A stretch of DNA of 64,000 nucleotides from the IMG/VR virus record IMGVR_UViG_3300037297_000066, positions 186,001-250,000 of that record; one strand, given 5' to 3'. Under the pieces are notes generated by a model. The model was not told the DNA's origin and did no database searches. It saw nothing but the letters and a program-made list of their open reading frames with translations. Made by a program: the position numbers and the translations under genes. Positions 8,830 to 29,632 of the stretch are shown here, piece after piece. Position 1 is the stretch's first letter. Each line of letters opens with the position of its first letter.

Positions 8830-9245
8830 CAGTGGTCCGTAAGGGCCCGCTTGAGCCCCTGGTACAACGCCTCTACCCTCGGCCAGTTCAACCCCATCAA
8901 GGGAACCTTCAGTTGAGCAGTCCCCACCCGGACCTTCACACCCTCACTGTCGGCTATGACCAGTGAAAGATGCTTCGGGTCCCAGCACAACCATACGGGT
9001 CGCCCCAAACGCTCCAGAGCCCCCTCCACATCACAAAAGGGTAGCTTGTCGTCATCTACGACCGTCCCCCGATACTCGATGCCCAGTAGCTGAGCTAGTA
9101 CCTCCCCCAGCCCCGTAGAACGGCCCTTTCCCCATACCTCGTCCCGGTAGGTCTCGTAGACCACCCCGAAAGCTTCCGGGGGCTCAGCCCTCTTCCAACC
9201 CTCCTGGGTCGGTACGTAGACCTTTGTGTCGTCTCGGATGCCCAT
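8829..9245 (-). CDS. Hypothetical protein
   Basis: ATG 6 nt after GGTGTACAGT. Confidence 0.75.
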   Translation of the reverse strand: MGIRDDTKVYVPTQEGWKRAEPPEAFGVVYETYRDEVWGKGRSTGLGEVLAQLLGIEYRGTVVDDDKLPFCDVEGALERLGRPVWLCWDPKHLSLVIADSEGVKVRVGTAQLKVPLMGLNWPRVEALYQGLKRALTDH

Positions 9246-9294
9246 GGCCTGACTGTACACCACAAGAGAGCTCCCCCGAAAGGGCTCAGGCCCA

Positions 9295-9336
9295 AGGGAG
9301 AAGATTCCTTGCGGGATGAGAAGGTTCCTTCCCCCC
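9295..9336 (-). repeat. Hairpin E copy 2
   Basis: Same 10-nt loop, stem sequence differs but still pairs. Confidence 0.7.
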
Positions 9337-9421
9337 TCACACCCCTCCCCCCATGGGGATGGCCCGGCGTAGCCCCGCCACCCCCCACAGAACTTAGCTA
9401 GGTAAGGGCTGTGAGCGGCCC
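9336..9421 (-). ncRNA. Candidate structured element related to 17347-17492
   Basis: Shares CTCACA/TGTGAG outer stem, GTTCT(C)GTGGGGG(G)TGGCGGGGC and CCCATGG. Confidence 0.4.
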
Positions 9422-9651
9422 CCAAGGCCCGCTTCCTTCTTAGCTACCTCGATTACCTCAAGTACTAGCATTCGAAGGAGTACTTGAGACGTGGGAGGAA
9501 AATGGCCGATGAGCTCTTGGACACCCTCCAAACAAGCCCTCTGAAGCTCCCCCACTGATACTCCTTGGCGAAGCCCCACGCTGAGCTGTCGAGCTAGATC
9601 CATGAACATGGCTGTGTCTTTCTCTACCTGCTCTTCTTTCGAGATGGACAT
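9394..9651 (-). CDS. Hypothetical protein
   Basis: ATG 6 nt after GGTGTACGGT. Confidence 0.7.
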   Translation of the reverse strand: MSISKEEQVEKDTAMFMDLARQLSVGLRQGVSVGELQRACLEGVQELIGHFPPTSQVLLRMLVLEVIEVAKKEAGLGGRSQPLPS

Positions 9652-9699
9652 ACCCTCACCGTACACCAGCCTCCTGAGCCCCCTACTAGGTTTTCTTTG

Positions 9700-10320
9700 G
9701 GAGGCCCCTCCCCCAAAAGGTCCCCCAGGGAGGGGTTGGGGCCTATGTAGGCGTATTCTCTCAGGGTTTCGGGGAGGCGTAAAAATCCTGCGGACAAAAA
9801 GGCCGGACATTTCGTGATGAAGAATCTTAGGGAGGTTTTGTACGTAAAGCCGTCTTTTCCCGGGGTTTTTGGATATACCGGCTCATTGGCCGAATCCGGC
9901 CCATGGGCAAAGCAACGATCAGGCCAAGGCACAGCTTTGAGATTCTGTCAATATTATTCGACTCCGGCCCTACGAATCATTGGTCATACCGGCCCACGGG
10001 TCATTTTAGGGCCGGGGCCCGGGGCTTCGCCGGGGCCGACGGCTGGAGGTTGCCCTGTTGGGGGGAGGGCCGGGGAATGGCGGAATCGAAGCAAGGAATT
10101 GACAACTCCCTATTTGGAAGATCCGGAATTTGGAAATCCCTAAGTTGGGCATTGCCGAATTACAAAATGCACAATCCCACCGCCGGCCCCTGGTGGGGGG
10201 AACCGAGGTGGGATCAGGTAGACAAAAAGGTGAGCGGCCCGGCCCTGGGCGTGGGGGGGAAACGCCTCTGGGGCCAGACCGCTCTGGAGCCTCGACAGTA
10301 GATCGGGCAGGTCGCCTTGT
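9700..10320. other. Non-coding region with 7 CCGGCCC heptamers and A/T tracts (origin or terminus candidate)
   Basis: No convincing ORF; heptamers at 9896, 9964, 9989, 10009(-), 10067(-), 10183, 10239. Confidence 0.4.
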
Positions 10321-10326
10321 CCAGAC

Positions 10327-10378
10327 AAAACGACTGACCCCCTCCAGACACAGCAGCCAATGAGGGGGTCATAGTCGT
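10327..10378 (-). terminator. Intrinsic terminator-like hairpin
   Basis: ACGACT-AT-GACCCCCTC...GAGGGGGTC-AGTCGT followed by TTT on the minus strand. Confidence 0.65.
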
Positions 10379-10452
10379 ACGCAGAGACTCGATTATAGTG
10401 CTACTCGATAGGGCCTCCGTTCCTTGATGGTTGTAGGGTTGTTGTTACGCTC

Positions 10453-10686
10453 TCAGGAGAAGAAGTTGGTCTCGGTCCGGTCGTCGTACTGGTCCACGGC
10501 CTGGGCCCGGTACTTGCCGTCCGCACACAGGAACACTCGGCAGTAGGTCCCGAAGAGGATTCGGAACCCCCGGTACTTCTCGGTTCCGTCCGTGGTGTAC
10601 TCGTCGTCCAACCAATCGGTCTGGGGGCCAGTTCTCCAGCGGTTTCCGGTGTTCAGCTTGAAGCAGTGTTCGGCGTGGTGAGTCAT
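10453..10686 (-). CDS. Hypothetical protein (class-A cassette)
   Basis: ATG 6 nt after motif A. Confidence 0.8.
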   Translation of the reverse strand: MTHHAEHCFKLNTGNRWRTGPQTDWLDDEYTTDGTEKYRGFRILFGTYCRVFLCADGKYRAQAVDQYDDRTETNFFS

Positions 10687-10692
10687 GTCTCT

Positions 10693-10721
10693 ATTACACG
10701 TGAGAGGGTTGGATCTTAACC
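10693..10721 (-). promoter_or_regulatory. Class-A promoter 1
   Basis: GGTTAAGATC-N12-GTGTAAT, ATG after 6 nt. Confidence 0.8.
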
Positions 10722-10735
10722 CGGGCTCCTCGGAA

Positions 10736-11059
10736 TCAGTACGCCTCGGCCCAGCCGCCACACTTGGGGCACCGGATACGCTGACCGGGCCGGTAGCCGA
10801 AGGACAGGAGGTCCTCGCAGGCACCGCACTGGCACTCCCCGTTGCTGCTGCGTCGGGGCCGGGGGCTGCTGGTGCCCTTCGAGGATTCGGTCTGGACCAG
10901 GGTCACCTTGCCGTCGGTCCAGAGGACACGTTGCACTGTGGCTGTCCAGGTCTTGCCGGCCTTGGTGTTGATCTCGATGATGGCGCCTTGTTGAACTGAA
11001 CCCTGAACTCGGGCACCCCAGGAGCCGTCACGGAGCTTGGAGGGAGTTGCTTTCGTCAT
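10736..11059 (-). CDS. Small protein with Cys-rich Zn-binding C-terminus
   Basis: CQCGAC..CPKCG; motif A start. Confidence 0.8.
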   Translation of the reverse strand: MTKATPSKLRDGSWGARVQGSVQQGAIIEINTKAGKTWTATVQRVLWTDGKVTLVQTESSKGTSSPRPRRSSNGECQCGACEDLLSFGYRPGQRIRCPKCGGWAEAY

Positions 11060-11065
11060 GCCCTT

Positions 11066-11094
11066 ATTACACGTGAGGGGCTCCGATCTTAACC
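11066..11094 (-). promoter_or_regulatory. Class-A promoter 2
   Basis: Motif A, ATG after 6 nt. Confidence 0.8.
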
Positions 11095-11125
11095 CGGGCC
11101 CCTTTCAAAAAATCAGAGACGGCTG

Positions 11126-11154
11126 GGTTAAGATCCAACCCTCTCAGGTGTAGT
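11126..11154 (+). promoter_or_regulatory. Class-A promoter 3
   Basis: Motif A, ATG after 6 nt. Confidence 0.8.
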
Positions 11155-11160
11155 GAGATC

Positions 11161-11361
11161 ATGGCATACCCGTACAACAACTGGGCCATCAAGCACGACG
11201 AACTAGGATTCTACGACGGCACCCTCCACGGGAAGCCCTGGTTTGGGGCGGACCAGTATGACGCCCACGGCTACCGGACCCGGAAGGATGCCCAGGCTGT
11301 GATAGACGGGGACCCCGAAGGGTTCAAGAACGCCCGGCCAGTGAACCTGAAGAAGTTGTAG
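11161..11361 (+). CDS. Hypothetical protein (class-A cassette)
   Basis: Motif A start. Confidence 0.8.
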   Translation: MAYPYNNWAIKHDELGFYDGTLHGKPWFGADQYDAHGYRTRKDAQAVIDGDPEGFKNARPVNLKKL

Positions 11362-11524
11362 AGGGAAGCCCTGCTACGGCTCTGCCCAGAGCCTCCCCTA
11401 GGCTACCCTCAGGGAACAGGTCAGCAGCCCAGGCTCCTGCCTCTTGAATCTCAGCTCGAAGGCGACGCTTCCCAGCTGGGGTTCTGAGGTAGGCGGCCAG
11501 GGCCTGTTCTTCTTGTGGAGTCAT
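11324..11524 (-). CDS. Hypothetical protein
   Basis: MTPQEEQALAAYLRTPAGKRRL; last gene of a minus-strand operon. Confidence 0.6.
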   Translation of the reverse strand: MTPQEEQALAAYLRTPAGKRRLRAEIQEAGAWAADLFPEGSLGEALGRAVAGLPSTTSSGSLAGRS

Positions 11525-11530
11525 CTCGAC

Positions 11531-11578
11531 CCAGAGTAGGCCCCCAGGGAGGGGCTGTCTACTCCCTGGGGGCTCTGG
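11531..11578. terminator. Strong intergenic hairpin
   Basis: CCCCCAGGGAG/CTCCCTGGGGG 11-bp stem plus CCAGAG/CTCTGG. Confidence 0.55.
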
Positions 11579-11806
11579 TCAGATGTTGCGAATCAGGGCG
11601 TCCCGGCCCTTTCCAGTGGCAGCGTAGTGCCCCCTGGGGCCCCGGTGCACCCAGAGCTTCTTAGCCATCCTCAGGAGGGTAAGGGAGGCCCAGGCTGAGG
11701 CTGTCTGGGGAGGCTTGCCCCCGACGTCGATGCCCACCCGGGTGGGGGAGACGTAGCCGCCTTCGGCCACGAGATAGCCCAGGATGGCTTCTTCTTTGGA
11801 GGTCAT
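11579..11806 (-). CDS. Winged-helix-like DNA-binding protein
   Basis: AILGYL..SPTRVG..L.RM.K..V...RGHYAAT.KG. Confidence 0.65.
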   Translation of the reverse strand: MTSKEEAILGYLVAEGGYVSPTRVGIDVGGKPPQTASAWASLTLLRMAKKLWVHRGPRGHYAATGKGRDALIRNI

Positions 11807-12057
11807 GCGGCCTTCTTCTGGGACCGTTCCCGGCATTTCTTGAGTTGAGAGAGGATTGACTTGCCCTCCTCGGAGACTTCGTAGCGACGGCCGTGTTGGT
11901 CCACCAACCCGTGCCGAACCAACTTCTGGAGGGGAGAGGCGGCCCAGAGGGGGGCGATGCTATGGTGATGGTTACCGACCAAAACCCCGATCTTCGTGAG
12001 GGAGGTGGGGCCCCTGCGGGCCAGGAAGGCTAGGATCGATTCCTGTCGGAGGGTCAT
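11803..12057 (-). CDS. Winged-helix-like protein, paralogue of 11579
   Basis: SILAFL..LQKLVRHGLV..RRYEVSEEG. Confidence 0.65.
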   Translation of the reverse strand: MTLRQESILAFLARRGPTSLTKIGVLVGNHHHSIAPLWAASPLQKLVRHGLVDQHGRRYEVSEEGKSILSQLKKCRERSQKKAA

Positions 12058-12263
12058 CAGATCCTCACAATGGAGTCAGGGGCCACTCCGAAGTGGTCCA
12101 AGAGCCACTCTTCGGCCGTGTTCCTTCGGAGCTCGAAGGACAGGACGACCTCTCTGTTGCCCCCCACGATGTTGCTGGGCATGTCTGTGTGCAGGTAGAC
12201 CCGATCGACGCCCATCTTGTCGTAGACGACGTTGACCCGGGTGACTTGGAAGTGAGGAGTCAT
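12057..12263 (-). CDS. Hypothetical protein
   Basis: SD GAAAGGA upstream; downstream of class-A promoter 4. Confidence 0.75.
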   Translation of the reverse strand: MTPHFQVTRVNVVYDKMGVDRVYLHTDMPSNIVGGNREVVLSFELRRNTAEEWLLDHFGVAPDSIVRI

Positions 12264-12294
12264 TGGGTTCCTTTCAGGTGTGGAGCCTACTTCT

Positions 12295-12323
12295 ACTACA
12301 CGTGAGGGGGCTGGATCTTAACC
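12295..12323 (-). promoter_or_regulatory. Class-A promoter 4 (leadered)
   Basis: Motif A followed by about 25-nt leader with SD. Confidence 0.75.
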
Positions 12324-12324
12324 C

Positions 12325-12525
12325 TCACCGGAAGGTAACACTCCGACGCCTCTTGCACTCGACCAGAAGGCCCGCTGCCGACAGCTTCCGGAGGTAGCGG
12401 ATGGCCACCTCTCGGGAGGGGAGGCCCAAGGCTCTCCTGGCATCATGAGCCGTGAAGGGCCTGTCCGGGTAGACGCCTCGGAGGAAGTCAGCGTTCCGGG
12501 CGTCGTCCTGGGTTACCTTGGCCAT
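12325..12525 (-). CDS. Small HTH-like protein
   Basis: FTAHDARRALGLPS..RYLRKLSAAGLL; motif A start. Confidence 0.7.
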   Translation of the reverse strand: MAKVTQDDARNADFLRGVYPDRPFTAHDARRALGLPSREVAIRYLRKLSAAGLLVECKRRRSVTFR

Positions 12526-12531
12526 GCCCTT

Positions 12532-12560
12532 ATTACACGTGAGGGGGTTGGATCTTAACC
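12532..12560 (-). promoter_or_regulatory. Class-A promoter 5
   Basis: Motif A, ATG after 6 nt. Confidence 0.8.
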
Positions 12561-12577
12561 CTGATCGGAGAGAGGGG

Positions 12578-12769
12578 TCAGTCCTTCACGACCCGGGGCA
12601 TCATGCGAGCGGTAGCCCCGTACCTTCGGGCACGCTCGTTGGCCTGTTCTAGGGTGAGGCCCCGAGCTGAGATGTAGTGAGGCTCGCCCCCGATTCGGAC
12701 CTCCACGTGGTAGGTGGGCTCCTTGGGCTCCTCGGGGGAGATGTTCTTGGAAGTGTTGTCGGTTGCCAT
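12578..12769 (-). CDS. TYHVE..RGLTL..VVKD family protein
   Basis: Paralogue of 12940 and 13887; motif A start. Confidence 0.8.
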   Translation of the reverse strand: MATDNTSKNISPEEPKEPTYHVEVRIGGEPHYISARGLTLEQANERARRYGATARMMPRVVKD

Positions 12770-12775
12770 GCCCCT

Positions 12776-12804
12776 ATTACACGTGAGGGGGTTGGATCTT
12801 AACC
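12776..12804 (-). promoter_or_regulatory. Class-A promoter 6
   Basis: Motif A; perfect 12-bp hairpin GACCCCCGGGAG just upstream. Confidence 0.8.
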
Positions 12805-12906
12805 CTGAACGTAGTGACCCCCGGGAGTTTCTGAGGCTCCCGGGGGTCGGGGTTCGGAGTTCTAACAGATATACCCCACCATACACCGGAGCTCAGGGTT
12901 TGGAGC

Positions 12907-12943
12907 CAGGTTTTTTGAGGGGTCAGGTTTTTTGAGGGGTCAG
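12907..12943. repeat. 17-bp tandem duplication CAGGTTTTTTGAGGGGT
   Basis: Two adjacent copies at the gene end. Confidence 0.7.
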
Positions 12944-13263
12944 TCCTTCACGACCCAAGCTTTCATGGGATGGTACTTCTGAGCCCACCTCTGGGCCTCT
13001 TCGAGAGTACGCCCCCGAGGGGACACGACGACAGGGTAACTCCTCACATGGATCTCCACGTGAAAGGTGGGCTCTGGAGTGGGGTTCTTCTTGGCTTCCC
13101 ACCGGGCCAGGACGGCCTGGCACCGGGTGCAGTTGACGTGCTCCTTGGCGGACGTGGTGCTGTGAGCTCGTCGGTTCCCACACACGGGCCTTCCTCCCCC
13201 GGTTTGGGAGAAGTGCATCACGAGGCCCTTGCGGGTCTTTTTGCTGGGGGTGCCGGTTGCCAT
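12940..13263 (-). CDS. Zn-finger + VVKD family protein
   Basis: H..CG..CTRC then TFHVE..RGRTLEEA..VVKD. Confidence 0.8.
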   Translation of the reverse strand: MATGTPSKKTRKGLVMHFSQTGGGRPVCGNRRAHSTTSAKEHVNCTRCQAVLARWEAKKNPTPEPTFHVEIHVRSYPVVVSPRGRTLEEAQRWAQKYHPMKAWVVKD

Positions 13264-13269
13264 GCCCCT

Positions 13270-13298
13270 ATTACACGTGAGGGGGGCCGATCTTAACC
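13270..13298 (-). promoter_or_regulatory. Class-A promoter 7
   Basis: Motif A, ATG after 6 nt. Confidence 0.8.
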
Positions 13299-13432
13299 CG
13301 GCCCGTGGGTATAAAAACAGGCCCGACCCGAGACCCGAAGCACCCATAACTCCCCGTATGGGGGCCTCGGATCGGGGGAAAAACGGGGTGAATTTTCGAC
13401 CGGGGTTCGATATCAGAAATAGCCTGGCCCGG

Positions 13433-13461
13433 GGTTAAGATCCGAGGCTCCCAGGTGTATT
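13433..13461 (+). promoter_or_regulatory. Class-A promoter 8
   Basis: Motif A variant (GTGTATT), ATG after 6 nt. Confidence 0.75.
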
Positions 13462-13467
13462 AGGGGC

Positions 13468-13593
13468 ATGAGCAAGAAGACGATGGTCACCCTGGCTTGT
13501 TGGATGCTCGCCCTGGCAACCTCGTCTGCTCAGACACCCCCCAAGGCCCGGACAGTGGAGCTCGAAGCCACCCTGGTTCAGGCCACCCTGTGA
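13468..13593 (+). CDS. 41-aa signal-peptide-like protein (not in ORF track)
   Basis: MSKKTMVTLACWMLALATSSAQ...; motif A start. Confidence 0.65.
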   Translation: MSKKTMVTLACWMLALATSSAQTPPKARTVELEATLVQATL

Positions 13594-13601
13594 GGACCCC
13601 C

Positions 13602-13835
13602 ATGAACGCCTACCTGATTCACAAGGACAAGATGGCCCGGATCGCCTTCCCCGATGACGCCCCTTCCGAGGTAGTGGACCGGATCAAGCGGGCCGTGGCC
13701 TCCCACATGACCCACCCCGATGGGATCCGACGCCCGGAGATGAGGGTGTGTGGGTGCCGGGTCTACTGGGCCTCCCCACTGTACTACTCGGACGTCCCCT
13801 CGGACCGCATCGAGTCGGCCTCGGACTACGTCTGA
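13602..13835 (+). CDS. Hypothetical protein
   Basis: GAGG SD before MNAYLIH. Confidence 0.7.
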   Translation: MNAYLIHKDKMARIAFPDDAPSEVVDRIKRAVASHMTHPDGIRRPEMRVCGCRVYWASPLYYSDVPSDRIESASDYV

Positions 13836-13851
13836 GAATCGCTCCTCTCCG

Positions 13852-13880
13852 GGTTAAGATCCAACCCTCTCAGGTGTAGT
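13852..13880 (+). promoter_or_regulatory. Class-A promoter 9
   Basis: Identical to copies 3, 10, 11. Confidence 0.8.
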
Positions 13881-13886
13881 GAGATC

Positions 13887-14156
13887 ATGGCAAGAAAACC
13901 TCGTCCTGACTGCCCCAACTGTGGGCATTCCCGGTGGACCTACAGGCTGTCCCAGCACTACTGGGCTTGTCAGAGGTGCCATGCCACCTGGGCGACGAAC
14001 GCCTACCAGAACAGGCCCCAAACCTACCACGTGGAGACCCGTCCACGTTACTCCGTCTCCAAGCGGGGGCTCACTCTCGTCGAGGCCCAACACAAGGCCC
14101 GAAAGTACAACTCCACCCATTTCCCCCAAGCCCACGTCGTGAAGGACGCATCATGA
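13887..14156 (+). CDS. Zn-ribbon + VVKD family protein
   Basis: CPNCG..CQRC, TYHVE..RGLTL..VVKD. Confidence 0.8.
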   Translation: MARKPRPDCPNCGHSRWTYRLSQHYWACQRCHATWATNAYQNRPQTYHVETRPRYSVSKRGLTLVEAQHKARKYNSTHFPQAHVVKDAS

Positions 14157-14362
14157 ACAAGAACGAAGTTTGGAAACGCTACCGTCGAGGCGACCACATC
14201 ACGGACCACGAGCTGGAAGTGCTCCTCAAAGACACGAAGCGGGCTCTGGACTCCCTGGTCTACCGGAACGACTACGGAGTCGTCACCCTGGCCCTGGCTG
14301 CGGATGTGGCCGCCCTGGAGGGGTACCAGCGTTCCCGGGAAATCCGGAAGCTCGAAGGCTGA
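14153..14362 (+). CDS. Hypothetical protein
   Basis: ATGA overlap, SD AAGGA. Confidence 0.75.
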   Translation: MNKNEVWKRYRRGDHITDHELEVLLKDTKRALDSLVYRNDYGVVTLALAADVAALEGYQRSREIRKLEG

Positions 14363-14374
14363 GCCCCCTCTCCG

Positions 14375-14403
14375 GGTTAAGATCCAACCCTCTCAGGTGT
14401 AGT
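14375..14403 (+). promoter_or_regulatory. Class-A promoter 10
   Basis: Motif A, ATG after 6 nt. Confidence 0.8.
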
Positions 14404-14409
14404 GAGATC

Positions 14410-14637
14410 ATGGCACAGAACAAGACCCCTGGTGGATTCAAGGTAACCCCCGCCCGTGCTGGGCAACCCCCGGTGGGTTCCAAGGTGGCCGTCAAGGCCC
14501 GAGTCAACCCCCTGGACTGGCCCTACAAGGACCGGGAGGGGACGGTCCTCGGCTACTCGGTCCCCCACGGGTTTGCCGTCCTCTCCTCCCATGGAGAGGA
14601 GCTCCTCATCCACCCCGAGAACCTGGACCTGGTCTGA
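14410..14637 (+). CDS. Small SH3/KOW-like beta protein
   Basis: VGSKVAV..YKDREGTVLG..LIHPENLDLV. Confidence 0.7.
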   Translation: MAQNKTPGGFKVTPARAGQPPVGSKVAVKARVNPLDWPYKDREGTVLGYSVPHGFAVLSSHGEELLIHPENLDLV

Positions 14638-14655
14638 GCAGAAATCGTAGGCCCG

Positions 14656-14684
14656 GGTTAAGATCCAACCCTCTCAGGTGTAGT
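14656..14684 (+). promoter_or_regulatory. Class-A promoter 11
   Basis: Motif A, ATG after 6 nt. Confidence 0.8.
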
Positions 14685-14690
14685 GTAGGT

Positions 14691-14981
14691 ATGACCAACG
14701 CAACCCTCCGAATGGTCCCTCAGGAAGCGGTAGACCCCCGGACCACTGAGGCCCGCTACAGCCACCCAGCCGTCTGCCACTGGTTCCCGACCACGCAGGC
14801 TTGGACCTGGGACGGAGGGGATGCCCTGGTGGTCGTGACCGGCCACTGCCCCGAGGTTCAGCCCTACGTGATCCTCAGGGTCGAGGACAAGGTTCACGTG
14901 GTCCCCGCTGAGGGGCTCACCTCGGCCGCTAGGGCCTTCGGGCTCGACCTGGCTCTGGCCCCCCTCCCCGAGGAGAACTAA
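14691..14981 (+). CDS. Hypothetical protein
   Basis: Motif A start. Confidence 0.75.
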   Translation: MTNATLRMVPQEAVDPRTTEARYSHPAVCHWFPTTQAWTWDGGDALVVVTGHCPEVQPYVILRVEDKVHVVPAEGLTSAARAFGLDLALAPLPEEN

Positions 14982-15418
14982 TGCAGGTCGTCATCCTGAG
15001 AGGGCTCCCGGGGTCAGGCAAGAGCTACATGGCCCGTACCATTGAGGGGGCCGTGGTCTGCTCGACGGACGACTACTTCGTGGACGGGGACGGACACTAC
15101 AAGTGGGAGGGAGCCAAGGTCCACTGGGCTCACAAGCAGTGCTTCCGGAAGTTCCTGCGGACCCTCCAGGAGGGCACGGCTCAGGTGGTGATTGTGGACA
15201 ACACTAACCTCCTGGCTTGGGAGATCGCCCCCTACTACCAGCTGGCTGAGTCCCTCGGGCACCAGGTGGTGATTGTGACCATCGAGGCCCCGGTGGAGCT
15301 CTGCAAGCGTCGGAACGTCCACGAGTGCCCCCCTGAGGTCATCGACCGGAGATACCGGGCTATGGTCCTGGAGCAGCTACCCCCCTACTGGGAGCACATT
15401 GTTCACCGGGAGGGTTAA
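14981..15418 (+). CDS. AAA_33 / N4BP2-like P-loop (polynucleotide) kinase
   Basis: LRGLPGSGKS Walker A, STDDYF, IVDNTN, RNVH. Confidence 0.88.
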   Translation: MQVVILRGLPGSGKSYMARTIEGAVVCSTDDYFVDGDGHYKWEGAKVHWAHKQCFRKFLRTLQEGTAQVVIVDNTNLLAWEIAPYYQLAESLGHQVVIVTIEAPVELCKRRNVHECPPEVIDRRYRAMVLEQLPPYWEHIVHREG

Positions 15419-15441
15419 GATCTGGGCCCCTCACGTGTAGT
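15413..15441 (+). promoter_or_regulatory. Class-A promoter 12 (no start codon at +1)
   Basis: Motif A; predicted +1 at G15448. Confidence 0.75.
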
Positions 15442-15447
15442 TATGGT

Positions 15448-15633
15448 GAACGGACGACATACCAGGACACGCCGAGAACAGCCTAGTGAGAGGTTCTGAC
15501 CGGCAGCGGCCCACGGGGGCGGGGAGATCTAGGCCCTGGAGAAACCCTTTGACAGATCCCCCCGAGGCCGGGCCTCATTAGCGGTCAGTCAGTCTCGGTA
15601 CTGGGGTCTCGCCTTGTGGGTTCTATGTCGTTC
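15448..15633. ncRNA. Candidate convergent sRNA pair with long central hairpin
   Basis: Two facing class-A promoters; both predicted transcripts start GAACG..ACATA; nested stems 15496-15588. Confidence 0.55.
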
Positions 15634-15639
15634 CCTTCC

Positions 15640-15668
15640 ATTACACGTGAGGCCCTCAGATCTTAACC
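15640..15668 (-). promoter_or_regulatory. Class-A promoter 13 (no start codon at +1)
   Basis: Motif A; predicted +1 at 15633. Confidence 0.75.
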
Positions 15669-15856
15669 TGAGGGGGGCGGAAATTACGCTTTGACCCCGG
15701 GAGGCTCCCGCACCGATCGCAACACTCCCCGGGCTGTCCCTGGGAGTCGGTGCAGAGGACCCCTTCCCGGGGGAGGGGGCGGCCACAGTTTGAGCAGTGG
15801 CGGCCCTGCCAGTAGGAGGGGTCGGGGGAGGGAGGCTTGGGGGAGGCGTGGGGCAT
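15656..15856 (-). CDS. Small Cys-rich Zn-finger protein
   Basis: CSNCG..CCDRCG; motif A start. Confidence 0.7.
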   Translation of the reverse strand: MPHASPKPPSPDPSYWQGRHCSNCGRPLPREGVLCTDSQGQPGECCDRCGSLPGSKRNFRPPQVKI

Positions 15857-15862
15857 GTCCCT

Positions 15863-15891
15863 ACTACACGTGAAAGGGCCAGATCTTAACC
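15863..15891 (-). promoter_or_regulatory. Class-A promoter 14
   Basis: Motif A, ATG after 6 nt. Confidence 0.8.
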
Positions 15892-15896
15892 CATGG

Positions 15897-16058
15897 AGAA
15901 AGGAAAGCCCCAAGCAGGGGGCCAGGGGCTTTCCGGTATCCTGTCGATCAGCATGTCAAAAATTCCGGAGTCGATCCCGGATTACGCTTTAGCAGGCTAA
16001 CACCTACTTCGGAGGCCCTCTGGCCTGGGCTCTCGGTGCGGGTTCTTGATTCCTCATG
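15897..16058 (-). ncRNA. Candidate ~160-nt sRNA or 17-codon peptide transcript
   Basis: Promoter A15, micro-ORF 16004-16057, ends in GGAAAGCCCC/GGGGCTTTCC-TTT hairpin. Confidence 0.45.
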
Positions 16059-16064
16059 TTCTCT

Positions 16065-16093
16065 ACTACACGTGAGGGGCCCAGATCTTAACC
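16065..16093 (-). promoter_or_regulatory. Class-A promoter 15
   Basis: Motif A, ATG after 7 nt. Confidence 0.75.
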
Positions 16094-16350
16094 CGTGGTG
16101 TATGGTAGGTGTGTATTTCAGGTCTCTAAGGTAAGGAAGGGCTCCTCCGGGGGCCCTTCTCGCTATTTTCCCTTTGGACAGGCTCTAGACGCATGAGGGC
16201 AGTTCTACGCCGGCTTCGACGTCGGCTCATACTACGGTGGTACCAGCGGTGTGCCTGCTGTGGGAGGGTGTACTGTCGGGCTTCCCGTCGGGCCGGGGAC
16301 GGAGTATGCTCAGCCACCTGCCAGGTATTGATTGACTCAGGGACTGAGGT

Positions 16351-16536
16351 ATGGAGCTCACATACATCGCATCGACCGTCGGGGTGATAGTAGGACTTGC
16401 CCTTGGGTTGTGGGTGGGTGAGATCCGAAGTAGTCGAGCATACCGAAGAGGGGTTGAGGATGAGCACCGGAGGGCAGGCCGGTGTTGGGTGAGGCAGCAG
16501 GTCGAGGGGCAGCTGCCCCCCGGAGTAGGTCAGTAG
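16351..16536 (+). CDS. Small membrane protein
   Basis: N-terminal TM, AYRRGVEDE; GAGGT SD. Confidence 0.6.
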   Translation: MELTYIASTVGVIVGLALGLWVGEIRSSRAYRRGVEDEHRRAGRCWVRQQVEGQLPPGVGQ

Positions 16537-17035
16537 GCCAATCGACAATCGAGTGTCGATTTCGGTTGCCCGGGGTGGACGGGTGTGCCTGCGGTTCAAC
16601 CACCGGCCCGCCGTAAAAAAACCGCTCCATTAACTTTTTCGGTTGTACCGAGAGTGGAAATGGGCACATTCAATGTCCGTGAATCCAGAAACTGTCGGGG
16701 GGTCAAAATCCCAGTAATTCAGACCCTCCTTGGGGGGAGGGGGACCCTTTTGGAGTCCCTGAGCTCTGGAATGGATCTCGAAATTTTCTAGGGTTCGGAA
16801 ATTTCTGGGAGATCTGGGTTAAACCAGGGGTTTGGCTCATGCTCCCCTGGGGGGCCAAGCAGATTCCCTAGCCTGGGTTGGTAGTTCTGGGGGCCGTAGT
16901 GTACAGTGATGGAGGCAGGGCCCTCTTTTGTGCCCACCTCTTTGGCACCGGGTCCGTCATTGCCCGTTATCTTTCCGGGGGGTCCTGCCACTTACTTCTA
17001 GCCACGAGCCTTTTTTTAGGGCTACCTTCGGGGCC

Positions 17036-17290
17036 ATGGTCAACAACAAGAAGCCGGGCCGTCCCCCGACCCCCAAGAAGTCTCAGTTACTCCCTCCTCA
17101 AGTGACCACGGTTGCCCAATGGTACCGGACCGGACTTTTCAATAGCGAAGAGGAAGCCAGGGGGGCGTTCAGACTCGCTCACCAGCAAGGGCTCGATGGG
17201 ATGGGGACAGGGGTTTCGGCGTGGATGGGGTTGCACGAGCAGGAGTACGACTCCTGGATGCGAGACGACTCCCTCCCTCCGAAGAGGTAA
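17036..17290 (+). CDS. Hypothetical protein with AT-hook-like KPGRP
   Basis: MVNNKKPGRPP..WMGLHEQEYDSW. Confidence 0.7.
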   Translation: MVNNKKPGRPPTPKKSQLLPPQVTTVAQWYRTGLFNSEEEARGAFRLAHQQGLDGMGTGVSAWMGLHEQEYDSWMRDDSLPPKR

Positions 17291-17346
17291 CATTTCTCAG
17301 AGCCCGTCTCCTGACTCTATGAGGGGGCCCTGAGGGGTTTGGCTGA

Positions 17347-17498
17347 CCCGATGGGCCCTCACACCTCCAGGGGAGAGAAAGGCTCTCTGGGGGCGTTCTC
17401 GTGGGGGTGGCGGGGCCTTAGGGGTTGCATGGTTCCTCTGGGGTCCCGCCCTCTCCTAGGAGTCCCATGGTTCTGGGGGTGTGAGCCTCGGGATTTTT
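17347..17498 (+). ncRNA. Candidate multi-stem structured RNA
   Basis: 13-bp outer and 16-bp inner stems fully paired only with + strand G-U pairs; T-tract after. Confidence 0.55.
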
Positions 17499-17521
17499 GG
17501 CCCGGTGGACTTTTTGGCTAG

Positions 17522-18277
17522 TTAGGCCGTCTGGACTGGCCAGTAAAAGGCTTCCCCTTCCAGCTCGAACCTAGTACCGGGTTTGACTCGGTAGGAGGGG
17601 CTCTTGACGCCTACGAAGCGGACTTCCTCGCAATGGTATCTGAGGGCATCGAGGAGCACAGGCTCTTTGGGCCTACAACCGAACACATCGGTCACACGAT
17701 CTTGGAGGGTACCCAAGTCGAGGGTGTCCTCTTGCAGGAGGATAGCGACTTGTTTTTCCAGGTCATTTGGGGGGAGGAAGCGGAAGGGCCCTGAGGGTTC
17801 TTGGCTGAGGCGCAGCTGCAGGGTGAGCAGGGCATCTTCCCCACTCCTTGAGCCCAAGTTAGGCCATTTGTCTTTACGCAGGTCACGGCAGACTTTTTGG
17901 CCGTGGGTGAGGACCAAGGGGATGTCGTGGAGCAGGGCTGCTTCGAGGAGGGCTTCCCAATCCTCCGAGTCTTGGTGTTGGGTGAGGGCCAAGATGTCGT
18001 GGTAGGCGAGGTAGACCTGTTTCCAGGAGCGGCAATTGGAGAAGCAGGCCCCGAAGGTAGCGGCATCAATCAGGCAGAGGGCCAGTTCTTCGTCGTCCAG
18101 GGATTCGATGACCTCGACAGCTTGCCCCAGGGTGAGGAATTCTTCCTCTCCGAAGACGAGGGCTGTCAGGCAGGCAGCGGGGGTTATCTTCAGCAAGTCA
18201 GCCAGGGCTTGGAGGTTCTTCTGGAAGGCTTGGGGGTTGTTGACGGGCCATTCGAGGGAGATGGTTGTATTGGGCAT
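17522..18277 (-). CDS. Hypothetical protein
   Basis: 251 aa; ATG after GGTGTATGGT. Confidence 0.8.
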   Translation of the reverse strand: MPNTTISLEWPVNNPQAFQKNLQALADLLKITPAACLTALVFGEEEFLTLGQAVEVIESLDDEELALCLIDAATFGACFSNCRSWKQVYLAYHDILALTQHQDSEDWEALLEAALLHDIPLVLTHGQKVCRDLRKDKWPNLGSRSGEDALLTLQLRLSQEPSGPFRFLPPNDLEKQVAILLQEDTLDLGTLQDRVTDVFGCRPKEPVLLDALRYHCEEVRFVGVKSPSYRVKPGTRFELEGEAFYWPVQTA

Positions 18278-18296
18278 GCCTCACCATACACCGGGG

Positions 18297-18506
18297 CTAC
18301 CAGGCACCGACGTCGCAACTGATGCCTTGGGGCCAGGGGAGCTGGAGGAGGACTGGGCCATCTTCGTCTTGGGGACCTTCCACGACACAGAGGCCGCTCC
18401 CTCCCTCGATGAAAATGTGGGGGTCCTGGGCCCCCTGGGCTTTGGCTGTTTGGATGCAGTCTTGGAGGAGTTTCTCCCACCGGCGAGCCAGTTGTTTTTG
18501 GGTCAT
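18297..18506 (-). CDS. Hypothetical protein
   Basis: ATG 6 nt after GGTGTACCCT. Confidence 0.7.
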   Translation of the reverse strand: MTQKQLARRWEKLLQDCIQTAKAQGAQDPHIFIEGGSGLCVVEGPQDEDGPVLLQLPWPQGISCDVGAW

Positions 18507-18512
18507 GGGTAG

Positions 18513-18537
18513 AGGGTACACCGGTTTGGTGTATGGT
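18513..18537. promoter_or_regulatory. Back-to-back class-B promoter pair
   Basis: AGGGTACACC-ggttt-GGTGTATGGT between divergent ATGs. Confidence 0.7.
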
Positions 18538-18544
18538 GGAGGGT

Positions 18545-18817
18545 ATGTCGAAAAACTCAACGCAGCTCGACCAACTGCGAGCCGAGACGGGTGCCGCTTT
18601 GGAACGTTACGGAGTGGCTTGTATGTCTTTGGCCAAGGCGATGGTGGAATACGAAATGGAACATAGCTCGGTTCCTCCTCTCCACTACTCGAAAGACGAT
18701 CCCAGGATGACTCGTATCATCGCCGCTCACAGGGAGATCGATAGAACGGAGCGTCTTGCAAGAGAGGCCAAGGTCCGCCTCCAGGAGGCTGAGACTTCTT
18801 CAGAGGTGGTGGAGTAA
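18545..18817 (+). CDS. Hypothetical helical protein
   Basis: Class-B start. Confidence 0.75.
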   Translation: MSKNSTQLDQLRAETGAALERYGVACMSLAKAMVEYEMEHSSVPPLHYSKDDPRMTRIIAAHREIDRTERLAREAKVRLQEAETSSEVVE

Positions 18818-18844
18818 AAAGATCCCCAACTTGGGGATCTTTTT
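18816..18844. terminator. Bidirectional intrinsic terminator
   Basis: AAAAAGATCCCCAA-C-TTGGGGATCTTTTT perfect inverted repeat. Confidence 0.8.
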
Positions 18845-18861
18845 GGTGTACTCTCCTGGGG

Positions 18862-19115
18862 ATGGGAAGAAGAACGCTGCCCTGGCCTTTGGGGATGCCC
18901 CGGACTCGGGAGAACGAGCATTTGTACCAATCGCATGTGGCGTTGGTATTGGGTTGGCCGGTTCGGTCTTTCTGGCACTGGCTCAGGAGTTTTGGGGGAC
19001 GTTCATGAAGAGGGGAGTCAAGACGCAGCTTCTGGTGCTTGAGATTGCGGTACTCTTGGAGGGGGTGGCACTCATGTGGCATTTGGTCCACACGCATGGG
19101 GATTGGTTTTGGTGA
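18862..19115 (+). pseudogene. Two-TM membrane protein, possibly frameshifted
   Basis: Promoter-defined ATG 18862 is out of frame with the TM-coding frame ending 19115. Confidence 0.35.
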
Positions 19116-29237: not shown

Positions 29238-29597
29238 ATGGGCAAAACAAGGATAGACTATCACGGTGGGGCGTCGAAAGAGGTATCCACCAAGGTTTGG
29301 TACCTAGAGGATATCCCCGACACTACCTTTTACCGTCAGCTGGAAGAGAGGGTTCGTCCGTTGGTGTACGTCCTACGTCAGCACGGTATCAACACTGAGA
29401 GCTCCTGTCACCACAGGGGGTACATTCAAGTTGATGGGAGTGCGTTCTCAAACAACGTCCATTTTTCTAGGGAGCTGTACTTCGCAATGTACGAGGTTAA
29501 CTGCCTACCCTACAACGTTCGGTGTGAACGGTACGTGGATGAGACGGGCCACTTCCACGAGATTTGCCGTATCCAGAGCGAGTTGTTGAAGATTTGA
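29238..29597 (+). CDS. Hypothetical protein (RPLV..L..G..T.SSC motif)
   Basis: Recurrent phage motif. Confidence 0.7.
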   Translation: MGKTRIDYHGGASKEVSTKVWYLEDIPDTTFYRQLEERVRPLVYVLRQHGINTESSCHHRGYIQVDGSAFSNNVHFSRELYFAMYEVNCLPYNVRCERYVDETGHFHEICRIQSELLKI

Positions 29598-29632
29598 GGC
29601 TCGTGTTCCAACCTCTCGGTGTATGGTGGGGC

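What the first reader, a model, noticed from the sequence alone, without database searches (positions are those of the whole stretch)
17347..17498. Multi-branched RNA structure with strand-specific G-U pairing, with an inverted relative at 9336-9421
Seen: between convergent genes, a 13-bp outer stem (CTCACACCTCCAG/CTGGGGGTGTGAG) and a 16-bp inner stem pair completely only if G-U is allowed on the + strand, which points to RNA-level selection. A shorter relative (CTCACA../..TGTGAG, GTTCT-GTGGGGGGTGGCGGGGC, CCCATGG) lies on the minus strand at 9336-9421. The two copies point outward on either side of the class-A island.
Basis: partly seen in the sequence, partly recalled or inferred. Interest (0 to 1): 0.7.

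Follow-up and report, generated by a model that had tools for sequence, protein, structure and literature searches.

The report
Branched RNA fold ending a phage transcript
A 150-base stretch of an uncultivated 437-kb phage folds, on one strand only, into an exceptionally stable three-armed RNA next to two U-runs; it most likely ends and protects the transcript of a small gene, and the proposed second copy is not a demonstrable relative.

Summary
The main observation holds. Window 17347-17498 (+) folds into a three-way junction of 58 pairs, 11 of them G-U (-91.7 kcal/mol, z -4.96; the 128-nt core z about -5.6 to -6.1). It is the lowest-energy 150-nt window in the whole 437-kb phage genome. The minus strand folds about 30 kcal/mol worse. 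The element starts 56 nt after the stop of an 84-aa gene, has no promoter-like motif in front, and closes one base before a U5 run. A second small hairpin and U5 run follow. An internal ORF is not conserved.

The claimed relative at 9336-9421 (-) fails every test. Its fold is no better than shuffles (z -1.5). The covariance model gives E 1.7. Two unrelated places in the genome align equally well, and its 5' arm lies in coding sequence. The real outward-facing structure on the left of the island is a strong minus-strand terminator at 10232-10284.

There is no Rfam match and no other copy. The only homologue is a 98%-identical strain, so covariation cannot be tested, and no RNA-seq run was listed. 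Best reading: an oversized intrinsic terminator and 3'-end stabiliser, possibly released as a phage sRNA. This is an ordinary kind of element in an unusually large form.

The parts
17347..17498 (+). The whole element: a three-way-junction fold plus the first U5 run.
   Evidence: MFE -91.7 kcal/mol, z -4.96; pair list; centroid has the same topology.
17358..17371 (+). P1 5' strand. It pairs with 17472-17485 (14 bp). An extension, 17347-17354 with 17486-17492, closes the fold one base before the U-run.
   Evidence: In the variant strain a 2-nt deletion in the 3' strand (17479-17480) weakens P1, but the junction persists.
17372..17388 (+). P2: a 6-bp hairpin with loop GAAAG.
   Evidence: On its own it is not better than shuffles (z -1.58).
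17390..17466 (+). P3: a hairpin of about 35 bp with loop UUGCAUGGUU. Its 5' strand (17389-17424) is also one of only two strict four-tract G-quadruplex motifs in the genome.
   Evidence: P3 alone -50.9 kcal/mol, z -4.72; G4 scan.
17467..17471 (+). Single-stranded junction AUGGU. CAUGGUUC occurs here (17466) and in the P3 loop (17428).
   Evidence: CAUGGUUC occurs only 19 times in the genome on both strands, two of them in the element.
17494..17498 (+). U5 run directly after the closing stem (terminator T1).
   Evidence: Sequence. The structure in front is the most stable before any T5 run in the genome: -105.7 against -79.2 for the next.
17486..17515 (+). Alternative small hairpin, 17486-17508, plus a second U5 run at 17511-17515 (terminator T2). 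It shares the strand CCUCGGG with the P1 extension. The two competing partners, CCCGAUGG and CCCGGUGG, are 7/8 identical.
   Evidence: -9.2 kcal/mol, z -0.9: modest.
17296..17334 (+). Weak upstream hairpin in the 56-nt spacer.
   Evidence: -17.4 kcal/mol, z -1.88. One variant substitution (17297 T>G) breaks a pair.
17036..17290 (+). Upstream 84-aa gene, whose 3' UTR the element forms. It belongs to an uncharacterised small-protein family of mobile elements.
   Evidence: 17 homologues at 54-68% identity; no Pfam or PHROG hit. Homologues elsewhere lack the long downstream spacer.
16899..16909 (+). GTGTACAGTGA box, the putative promoter of this unit. It resembles the -10-like part of the island motif.
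   Evidence: 7 matches in the genome to GTGTAC[AG]GT[GC]A. That it is a promoter is inferred, not tested.
17522..18277 (-). Convergent 251-aa gene of unknown function. There is no U-run for it on the minus strand.
   Evidence: sequence.
9336..9421 (-). The proposed 'copy 2'. It is not a demonstrable relative: a G-rich hairpin region between two minus-strand genes, without a U-run.
   Evidence: It is nearly invariant between strains: one substitution, 9354 T>C, which changes its CAUGG to CGUGG.
10224..10284 (-). The real left-hand outward terminator of the island: a 53-nt hairpin (10232-10284) plus a U5 run (10224-10228).
   Evidence: -38.1 kcal/mol, z -5.29. It is the best local hairpin before any T5 run in the genome.

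Best explanation
The element is the structured 3' end of the plus-strand transcript that carries the 84-aa gene 17036-17290.

Proposed mechanism: as RNA polymerase leaves the gene, P2 and then the long P3 hairpin fold. Transcription of the 3' strand of P1 closes a 146-nt three-way junction one base before a U5 run. This is the geometry of an intrinsic (Rho-independent) terminator. Polymerases that read through meet a second, small hairpin that re-uses the same CCUCGGG strand and is followed by another U5 run.

Expected result: transcription stops before it runs head-on into the convergent gene. The released RNA ends in a very stable, largely double-stranded domain that should block 3' exonucleases. 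That domain may persist as a roughly 150-nt 3'-UTR-derived phage sRNA.

Shown: the fold statistics, the strand specificity, the position behind a gene, the U-runs, the lack of coding conservation and the single-copy status. Inferred: transcription, termination, stabilisation and any release as an sRNA.
For: 1. Fold: z -4.96 to -6.06 on the plus strand against -2.27 on the minus strand. It is the lowest raw folding energy in the genome.
2. Position: it begins 56 nt after the stop of a plus-strand gene. No sigma-70-like site and no phage-motif promoter lies in between.
3. Terminator geometry: the stem closes at 17492, followed by A and U5; a second hairpin and U5 follow. It is the most stable structure in front of any T5 run in the genome.
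4. Terminator use in this phage: terminator-like sites are enriched in this region, 23 found against 9.2 +/- 3.0 expected. The phage uses long hairpin-plus-U5 terminators elsewhere in the island, at 10232-10284 (-) and at 13317 (-).
5. Unusual gap: convergent junctions in this genome normally have a median gap of 13 nt, and this one has 231 nt.
6. Strain variant: of three substitutions, one is unpaired and two keep pairing on the plus strand only (G-U to A-U, G-C to G-U). The three-way junction is retained (-82.8 kcal/mol, z -3.13).
7. Not coding: the internal ORF 17351-17521 loses its ATG (17352 T>C) and is frameshifted by the 2-nt deletion in the variant.
Against: There is no transcript data: no RNA run was listed. 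Covariation cannot be tested, since the only relatives are 98% identical. Two pair-keeping transitions out of two is not significant, because about half of random transitions keep a pair.

The surrounding block 16740-17545 is uniformly 98-99% identical, including synonymous sites of the gene. The element's conservation may therefore reflect recent shared ancestry of the block rather than constraint.

A terminator needs only a short hairpin, so a 146-nt branched fold is far more than termination requires. The small T2 hairpin alone is no better than shuffles. The variant's deletion weakens P1, the very stem that would trigger termination at T1. After correction for composition the fold ranks only 114th of 29,146.
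Confidence: 0.5

Rival explanations
1. It is a stand-alone functional phage ncRNA, such as a sponge, decoy or protein-binding RNA. The three-way junction would be the functional body and the U-runs merely its own terminator. The two exposed CAUGGUUC motifs, in the P3 loop and the junction, would be the binding sites.
For: The fold is much larger and more stable than termination needs. CAUGGUUC occurs twice in 152 nt, both times single-stranded, against 19 copies in 875 kb of both strands. Giant phages are known to encode sRNAs of unknown function: 11 were reported in phage 201phi2-1, three of them intergenic (PMC11512511).
Against: No promoter-like motif lies directly upstream. No Rfam family matches, even at E<=10. 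There is no second copy and no homologue outside one near-identical strain. No complementary target for the loops was found in the phage genome. There is no expression data.
Confidence: 0.2
2. It is a DNA-level or single-stranded-DNA element linked to the nearby replication origin or to recombination. Examples are a strand-specific priming hairpin, a G-quadruplex or R-loop-forming tract, or a recombination boundary.
For: The global GC-skew minimum and the gene-strand switch lie at window 9726, at the left edge of the same island. The fold is also significant with DNA parameters (-36.5 kcal/mol, z -3.84). Positions 17389-17424 are one of only two strict G4 motifs in the genome. G/C-run density peaks in this region. 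Strain mosaicism has a boundary at about 17545.
Against: The element is 7.7 kb from the skew minimum. A better origin candidate, non-coding 9667-10452 with a tandem repeat, lies there. The complementary C-rich strands inside the element favour a hairpin over a G4. The U-runs and the position behind a gene have a direct RNA explanation.
Confidence: 0.08
3. It has no dedicated function. It would be a by-product of the G-run and C-run-rich, G/T-skewed sequence of this region, perhaps the remnant of a nested hairpin duplication, that happens to fold well.
For: After regression on composition it ranks 114th of 29,146 windows, and 67 other clusters in the genome reach similar residuals, many of them inside genes. 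The G-U share equals that of shuffles. The two halves share CCU..AGGGG and CAUGGUUC..CUGGGG strings, which suggests a duplication. The variant carries a stem-weakening deletion.
Against: Dinucleotide shuffles never reach the observed energy: 0 of 200 and 0 of 500, z -5 to -6. There are 11 G.U against 0 A.C appositions. The closing stem abuts a U-run. The 231-nt gap is atypical for convergent junctions here.
Confidence: 0.12
4. It is a small protein-coding gene: ORF 17351-17521, 56 aa, Gly/Trp-rich.
For: An open frame spans the element (17339-17521).
Against: The variant strain turns the ATG into ACG (17352 T>C) and shifts the frame by a 2-nt deletion at 17479. The in-house codon-usage gene caller did not call it.
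Confidence: 0.03

Closest known systems
Intrinsic (Rho-independent) transcription terminators, including the tandem or compound hairpin types described in GC-rich bacteria
   Same: A GC-rich stem closes directly before a U-run, downstream of a stop codon on the transcribed strand, with a second hairpin and U-run as back-up. The same phage has canonical long-hairpin terminators nearby.
   Different: The 'hairpin' is a 146-nt three-way junction with a 35-bp arm, more than ten times the size of a usual terminator stem-loop. The closing stem pairs bases 135 nt apart. It is one-directional: there is no A-tract upstream, so there is no U-run for the convergent gene.
3'-UTR-derived and intergenic sRNAs of giant phages (e.g. 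the 11 sRNAs reported for Pseudomonas phage 201phi2-1, PMC11512511)
   Same: A short, structured, terminator-ended non-coding region in a giant phage, of unknown function and without an Rfam family.
   Different: Those sRNAs were defined from transcript ends. Most are 5'-UTR-derived, and one is conserved across genera. Here there is no transcript evidence and no conservation beyond one strain.
RNase III processing and stabiliser hairpins between early genes of phage T7 (from general knowledge, not tested here)
   Same: Long, imperfect, G-U-containing duplexes at the ends of early phage messages, which leave a protective 3' hairpin.
   Different: No RNase III gene was found in the phage and the host is unknown. 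Cleavage is not testable here, and the branched shape differs from the T7 sites.
6S RNA (from general knowledge)
   Same: Similar length. The ends pair into a long rod that is interrupted in the middle.
   Different: No hit to the Rfam 6S models even at E<=10. The interruption is a small hairpin plus 5 nt, not a large open bubble.

Membership tests
Intrinsic terminator | A stable GC-rich stem ending 0-3 nt before a run of U on the transcribed strand | tested here: met
   The stem closes at 17492, then A and U5 (17494-17498). A second hairpin, 17486-17508, is followed by U5 at 17511-17515.
Intrinsic terminator | Lies downstream of a gene on the same strand, with no promoter in between | tested here: met
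   It starts 56 nt after the stop of 17036-17290 (+). No sigma-70-like or phage-motif site lies in between.
Intrinsic terminator | A simple local stem-loop (about 5-15 bp, small loop) | tested here: not met
   T1 is closed by a 146-nt three-way junction. Only the weak T2 hairpin (-9.2 kcal/mol, z -0.9) is simple.
Intrinsic terminator | RNA 3' ends map to the U-run | not testable with these tools
   No RNA run was listed for this sequence.
Any described RNA family (Rfam 15) | Match to a covariance model at the gathering score | tested here: not met
   0 matches in the 64-kb window. Nothing on the element even at E<=10.
Repeated element family (two inverted copies, MITE/REP-like) | A second copy recognisable by sequence and structure above background | tested here: not met
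   The covariance model finds only the element itself in 437 kb. The proposed copy 2 scores E 1.7. Its alignment score of 32 compares with 33 at two unrelated places.
Conserved structured ncRNA | Compensatory base changes in homologues | tested here: inconclusive
   The only homologues are 98% identical. Two stem substitutions keep pairing by one-sided changes, and one 2-nt deletion weakens P1.
Small protein gene | Start codon and reading frame conserved in relatives | tested here: not met
   In the variant the ATG becomes ACG and the frame is shifted.
G-quadruplex motif | Four G-tracts of at least 4 with short loops | tested here: met
   17389-17424 is one of two such motifs in the genome. 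Actual G4 formation was not tested, and the C-rich partner strand competes.

The most novel reading that the evidence does not exclude
The element is a new class of phage-encoded stable RNA. A three-way-junction scaffold would display two identical single-stranded CAUGGUUC motifs. These resemble the AUGG start context of this phage's many leaderless early genes. The RNA would act in trans as a decoy or sponge for a host or phage factor that recognises such starts, or for a nuclease, at the boundary of the early-gene island next to the replication origin.
Probability: 0.12. Interest if true: 0.65.

Novelty: new member of a known kind. Interest (0 to 1): 0.3.

Why it matters
If the reading is right, this is an extreme example of how a huge, uncultivated phage insulates an early transcription unit from a convergent gene and stabilises its message. 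It is useful for annotating the phage and as a candidate strong terminator part, but it is not a new principle.

It would matter more if the 150-nt fold proved to be a stable trans-acting RNA, because functional RNAs of giant phages are almost unexplored.

The surroundings may be of more value than the element itself. They include a 40-copy promoter-like motif placed 8-9 nt before start codons (leaderless genes), an early-gene island sitting at the genome's GC-skew minimum, and several other gene-free, strongly folding stretches.

Tried and rejected
- Rfam at gathering score and at E<=10 found nothing on the element. Two other gene-free regions of the genome also gave nothing.
- tRNA/tmRNA scan: nothing at the element.
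- IMG/VR scans with both neighbouring proteins found no relatives.
- An IMG/VR scan with the G-rich 16-mer gave 76 unrelated chance hits; the covariance model finds nothing in them.
- An IMG/VR scan with the island motif gave 0 hits.
- A metagenome pattern scan for the two CAUGGUUC-containing segments found only the already known strain variant.
- GenBank phages by blastn: no match.
- The homologues of the 84-aa protein were fetched in seven look-ups. Outside the near-identical strain, none carries the long downstream spacer or the RNA.
- RNA sequencing runs: none listed.
- A search for complementary targets of the loops in the phage genome found none.
- Hammerhead or other ribozyme cores: the junction strands (0, 1 and 5 nt) lack the conserved cores, by reading, and there are no Rfam hits.
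- MITE or transposon end: single copy, and no target-site duplication.
- Coding ORF: rejected by the strain variant.
- A script to find a second copy of 9295-9332 in the genome timed out and was dropped.
- My first genome-wide 'structure before T5' scan overstates spans, because a 180-nt MFE tends to close its ends. It was used only for the energy ranking and complemented by the local-hairpin scan.

Full report
WHERE THE WINDOW LIES. The window is bases 186001-250000 of a 437,331-bp IMG/VR virus record with direct terminal repeats, rated complete. Wetland and marine-sediment metagenomes hold it. No RNA sequencing run that holds it was listed.

THE OBSERVATION. The minimum-energy fold of 17347-17498 (+) has three helices.
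- P1 pairs 17358-17371 with 17472-17485. An extension pairs 17347-17354 with 17486-17492.
- P2 is a 6-bp hairpin at 17372-17388.
- P3 is a hairpin of about 35 bp at 17390-17466, with loop UUGCAUGGUU.
- A 5-nt junction strand, AUGGU, joins P3 back to P1.

The fold has 58 pairs. Eleven are G-U, and no A.C apposition occurs.

Energies:
- Plus strand: -91.7 kcal/mol, z -4.96, 0 of 200 dinucleotide shuffles as good.
- 128-nt core: -80.8 kcal/mol, z -5.58; z -6.06 with 500 shuffles.
- P3 alone: z -4.72.
- Minus strand: -59.8 kcal/mol, z -2.27.
- Plus strand with G-U forbidden: -51.2 kcal/mol, about the same as the minus strand at -49.9.

The roughly 30 kcal/mol strand difference is therefore due to wobble pairs. 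In a scan of all 150-nt windows of the genome on both strands, this is the lowest raw energy. After regression on base composition it ranks 114th of 29,146. The share of G-U pairs (22%) equals that of shuffles (24%). G-U pairing as such reflects the G/T-rich strand. The evidence for single-strand selection is the z-score and the 11:0 excess of G.U over A.C.

THE PROPOSED SECOND COPY.
- Fold: z -1.53, with 15 of 200 shuffles as good; z -1.76 for 9320-9440.
- BLAST: E 0.45.
- Local alignment: score 32, while two unrelated places in the genome score 33.
- Covariance model: model R1, built from the element and its strain variant, finds only the element in the whole genome. With filters off it gives copy 2 9.5 bits, E 1.7, rank 14 in 30 kb.
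- Position: its 5' arm covers the last seven codons of an 85-aa gene at 9397-9651 (-). No U-run follows it.
- Pairing scheme: in the element, the shared block GUGGGGGUGGCGGGGC pairs with a distal C-rich strand. In copy 2 it pairs with the CCCCAUGG string.

The stretch 9307-9423 is nearly invariant between strains, while its flanks differ by about 10%. It may therefore be functional in its own right, but it is not a copy of the element. Its one substitution changes the 'shared' CAUGG to CGUGG.

CONTEXT. A crude codon-usage gene call and ORF lists place the element between an 84-aa gene at 17036-17290 (+) and a convergent 251-aa gene at 17522-18277 (-). Neither gene has a Pfam or PHROG match.

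The 84-aa protein belongs to a well-conserved, uncharacterised family with 17 homologues at 54-68% identity. The family is found beside integrases, resolvases and HTH genes in phages and other mobile elements. In those loci the gene is followed at once by the next gene, so the RNA is not a companion of the family.

In 24 of the 40 copies an ATG lies exactly 8-9 nt after GTGTA and opens an ORF of 41-279 codons. This looks like a promoter for leaderless small genes.

A related box, GTGTAC[AG]GT[GC]A, occurs seven times in the genome. Three of them flank the island and point outward, at 16899 (+), 9650 (-) and 9244 (-). The one at 16899 is the likely promoter of the unit that ends in the element. 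This is an inference. No promoter-like motif lies between the gene's stop and the element.

The global minimum of cumulative GC skew, and the switch of gene strand, lie at window 9726. The gene-free stretch 9667-10452, which contains a 15-nt tandem repeat, is the best origin candidate.

TERMINATOR GEOMETRY. The P1 extension closes at 17492 and is followed by A and U5 (17494-17498). In a longer fold, the same CCUCGGG strand instead pairs downstream with CCCGGUGG, forming a small hairpin that is followed by a second U5 at 17511-17515. The two competing partners, CCCGAUGG and CCCGGUGG, are 7/8 identical.
- The structure before 17494 is the most stable one in front of any T5 run in the genome: -105.7 against -79.2 for the next.
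- Terminator-like sites are enriched in this region: 23 against 9.2 +/- 3.0 expected.
- The best local hairpin-plus-U5 in the genome is on the minus strand at 10232-10284 (-38.1 kcal/mol, z -5.29). It ends the leftmost island unit.

Outward-facing terminal structures do therefore flank the island. The left one is an unrelated canonical terminator, not 9336-9421. On the minus strand the element has no U-run, so it is one-directional. Convergent junctions in this genome have a median gap of 13 nt. This gap is 231 nt, the seventh largest of 57.

RELATIVES AND VARIATION. No relatives beyond one near-identical strain were found in any collection searched.
- Rfam: nothing.
- GenBank phages: nothing.
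- IMG/VR: nothing related.
- JGI metagenome pattern scan: only the known variant.

A marine-sediment strain is 98% identical across the element (contigs L087 and L088, and runs X4, X6 and X8). Its differences are:
- 17352 T>C, an unpaired position.
- 17415 G>A, which turns a G-U pair into A-U.
- 17456 C>T, which turns a G-C pair into G-U.
- A 2-nt deletion at 17479-17480 in the 3' strand of P1.

The variant still folds into the same junction (-82.8 kcal/mol, z -3.13). Both stem substitutions keep pairing on the plus strand, whereas on the minus strand one would break a pair. About half of random transitions would do the same, so this is weak support.

The whole block from about 16740 to 17545 is 98-99% identical, including synonymous sites of the gene. 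The flanks differ by 10-20%, and synteny breaks at 17658. Low divergence of the element therefore cannot be read as constraint. The variant does dispose of the internal ORF 17351-17521: its ATG becomes ACG and its frame is shifted.

OTHER FEATURES OF THE ELEMENT.
- CAUGGUUC occurs twice, both times single-stranded: in the P3 loop at 17428 and in the junction at 17466. It occurs only 19 times in both strands of the genome.
- The strands next to the two copies are also alike. This suggests a nested duplication, and is consistent with two equivalent binding sites.
- No complementary target was found in the phage genome.
- The 5' strand of P3 is one of only two strict four-tract G-quadruplex motifs in the genome. 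Its C-rich partner strand makes the hairpin the likelier state.
- The fold is also significant with DNA parameters (z -3.84), so a single-stranded-DNA role cannot be excluded.
- No Pfam-recognisable RNA polymerase or RNase III is encoded by the phage. The PF00940 search is uninformative, because its controls did not ring either. This fits use of the host polymerase and hence U-run terminators, but the host is unknown.

INTERPRETATION. The best-supported reading (confidence about 0.5) is an oversized intrinsic terminator and 3'-end stabiliser of the small-gene transcript, with a back-up terminator, and possibly the source of a stable 3'-UTR-derived RNA. The size of the fold exceeds what termination needs. 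This keeps open a dedicated ncRNA function (about 0.2). Giant phages are known to make sRNAs of unknown function (PMC11512511). A DNA-level role near the origin (about 0.08), a functionless by-product of the G-run-rich sequence (about 0.12) and a small protein (about 0.03) are less likely.

It is not a member of any described RNA family. It has no second copy, and it is confined to one phage lineage.

VERDICT. The structure is real, strand-specific and statistically strong. The 'inverted relative' is not supported. The kind of element is ordinary (a terminator or 3'-UTR structure) in an unusual size. Interest is about 0.3. It would rise if transcript data showed a discrete stable RNA.

Noticed in passing
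window 10660-16100 and genome-wide (40 sites): The motif GGTTAAGATC-N7-CTCACGTGTA occurs 40 times in the phage. In 24 cases an ATG lies exactly 8-9 nt after GTGTA and opens an ORF of 41-279 codons. This looks like a promoter for leaderless small (early?) genes. The motif is absent from all other IMG/VR contigs.
   Followed up: partly
window 16899 (+), 9650 (-), 9244 (-): A second box, GTGTAC[AG]GT[GC]A, occurs 7 times in the genome. Three copies flank the island and point outward, each a few bases before an ATG.
   Followed up: partly
window 9667-10452: The global cumulative GC-skew minimum (9726) and the switch of gene strand fall here. The stretch is gene-free and holds a 15-nt tandem repeat at 10114-10148 and an AT-rich patch. 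It is a candidate replication origin.
   Followed up: partly
window 10224-10284 (-): The strongest canonical hairpin-plus-U5 terminator in the whole genome (-38.1 kcal/mol, z -5.29). It ends the leftmost island unit and points outward.
   Followed up: yes
window 11425-11505: An 81-nt near-perfect palindrome, which folds on both strands and gives chance miRNA-like Rfam hits. It lies after the small gene 11161-11361. Further strong hairpins reach to 11653.
   Followed up: no
genome 99418-101709, 108948-111115, 278619-280993 (outside the window; L093 covers the first two): Gene-free stretches of about 2.2-2.4 kb with several very strongly folding windows. The first two have no Rfam family and no tRNA.
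   Followed up: partly
window 15419-17035: A 1.6-kb stretch without a confident gene. It holds three leftward island motifs with only tiny ORFs, and a 157-aa minus-strand ORF (16126-16599). That ORF is called as a gene in the variant contigs, but the in-house codon-usage gene caller did not call it.
   Followed up: no
window 16740-17545 and 9307-9423: Strain mosaicism. These blocks are 98-99% identical in a marine-sediment strain, while the flanks differ by 10-20%. Synteny breaks at 17658. The variant also carries a second copy of 9295-9332 about 320 nt away.
   Followed up: partly
window 17036-17290: The 84-aa protein belongs to a tightly conserved, unnamed family (core EARGAFRLAxQQGLDGMG...WMGL..EYDxWMRDDSLP). 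The family is found next to integrases, resolvases and defence genes in mobile elements. The C-terminal half looks like a helix-turn-helix by eye.
   Followed up: partly
window 29528-29628: ARAGORN calls a tRNA-Gly(GCC) of 101 nt with the anticodon at position 39. This is unusually long, and it overlaps called ORFs. It could hold an intron or be a false call.
   Followed up: no
window 9000-19000: The density of G or C runs of at least 5 is about three times the genome mean here: 42-43 per 5 kb against a mean of 15.
   Followed up: no
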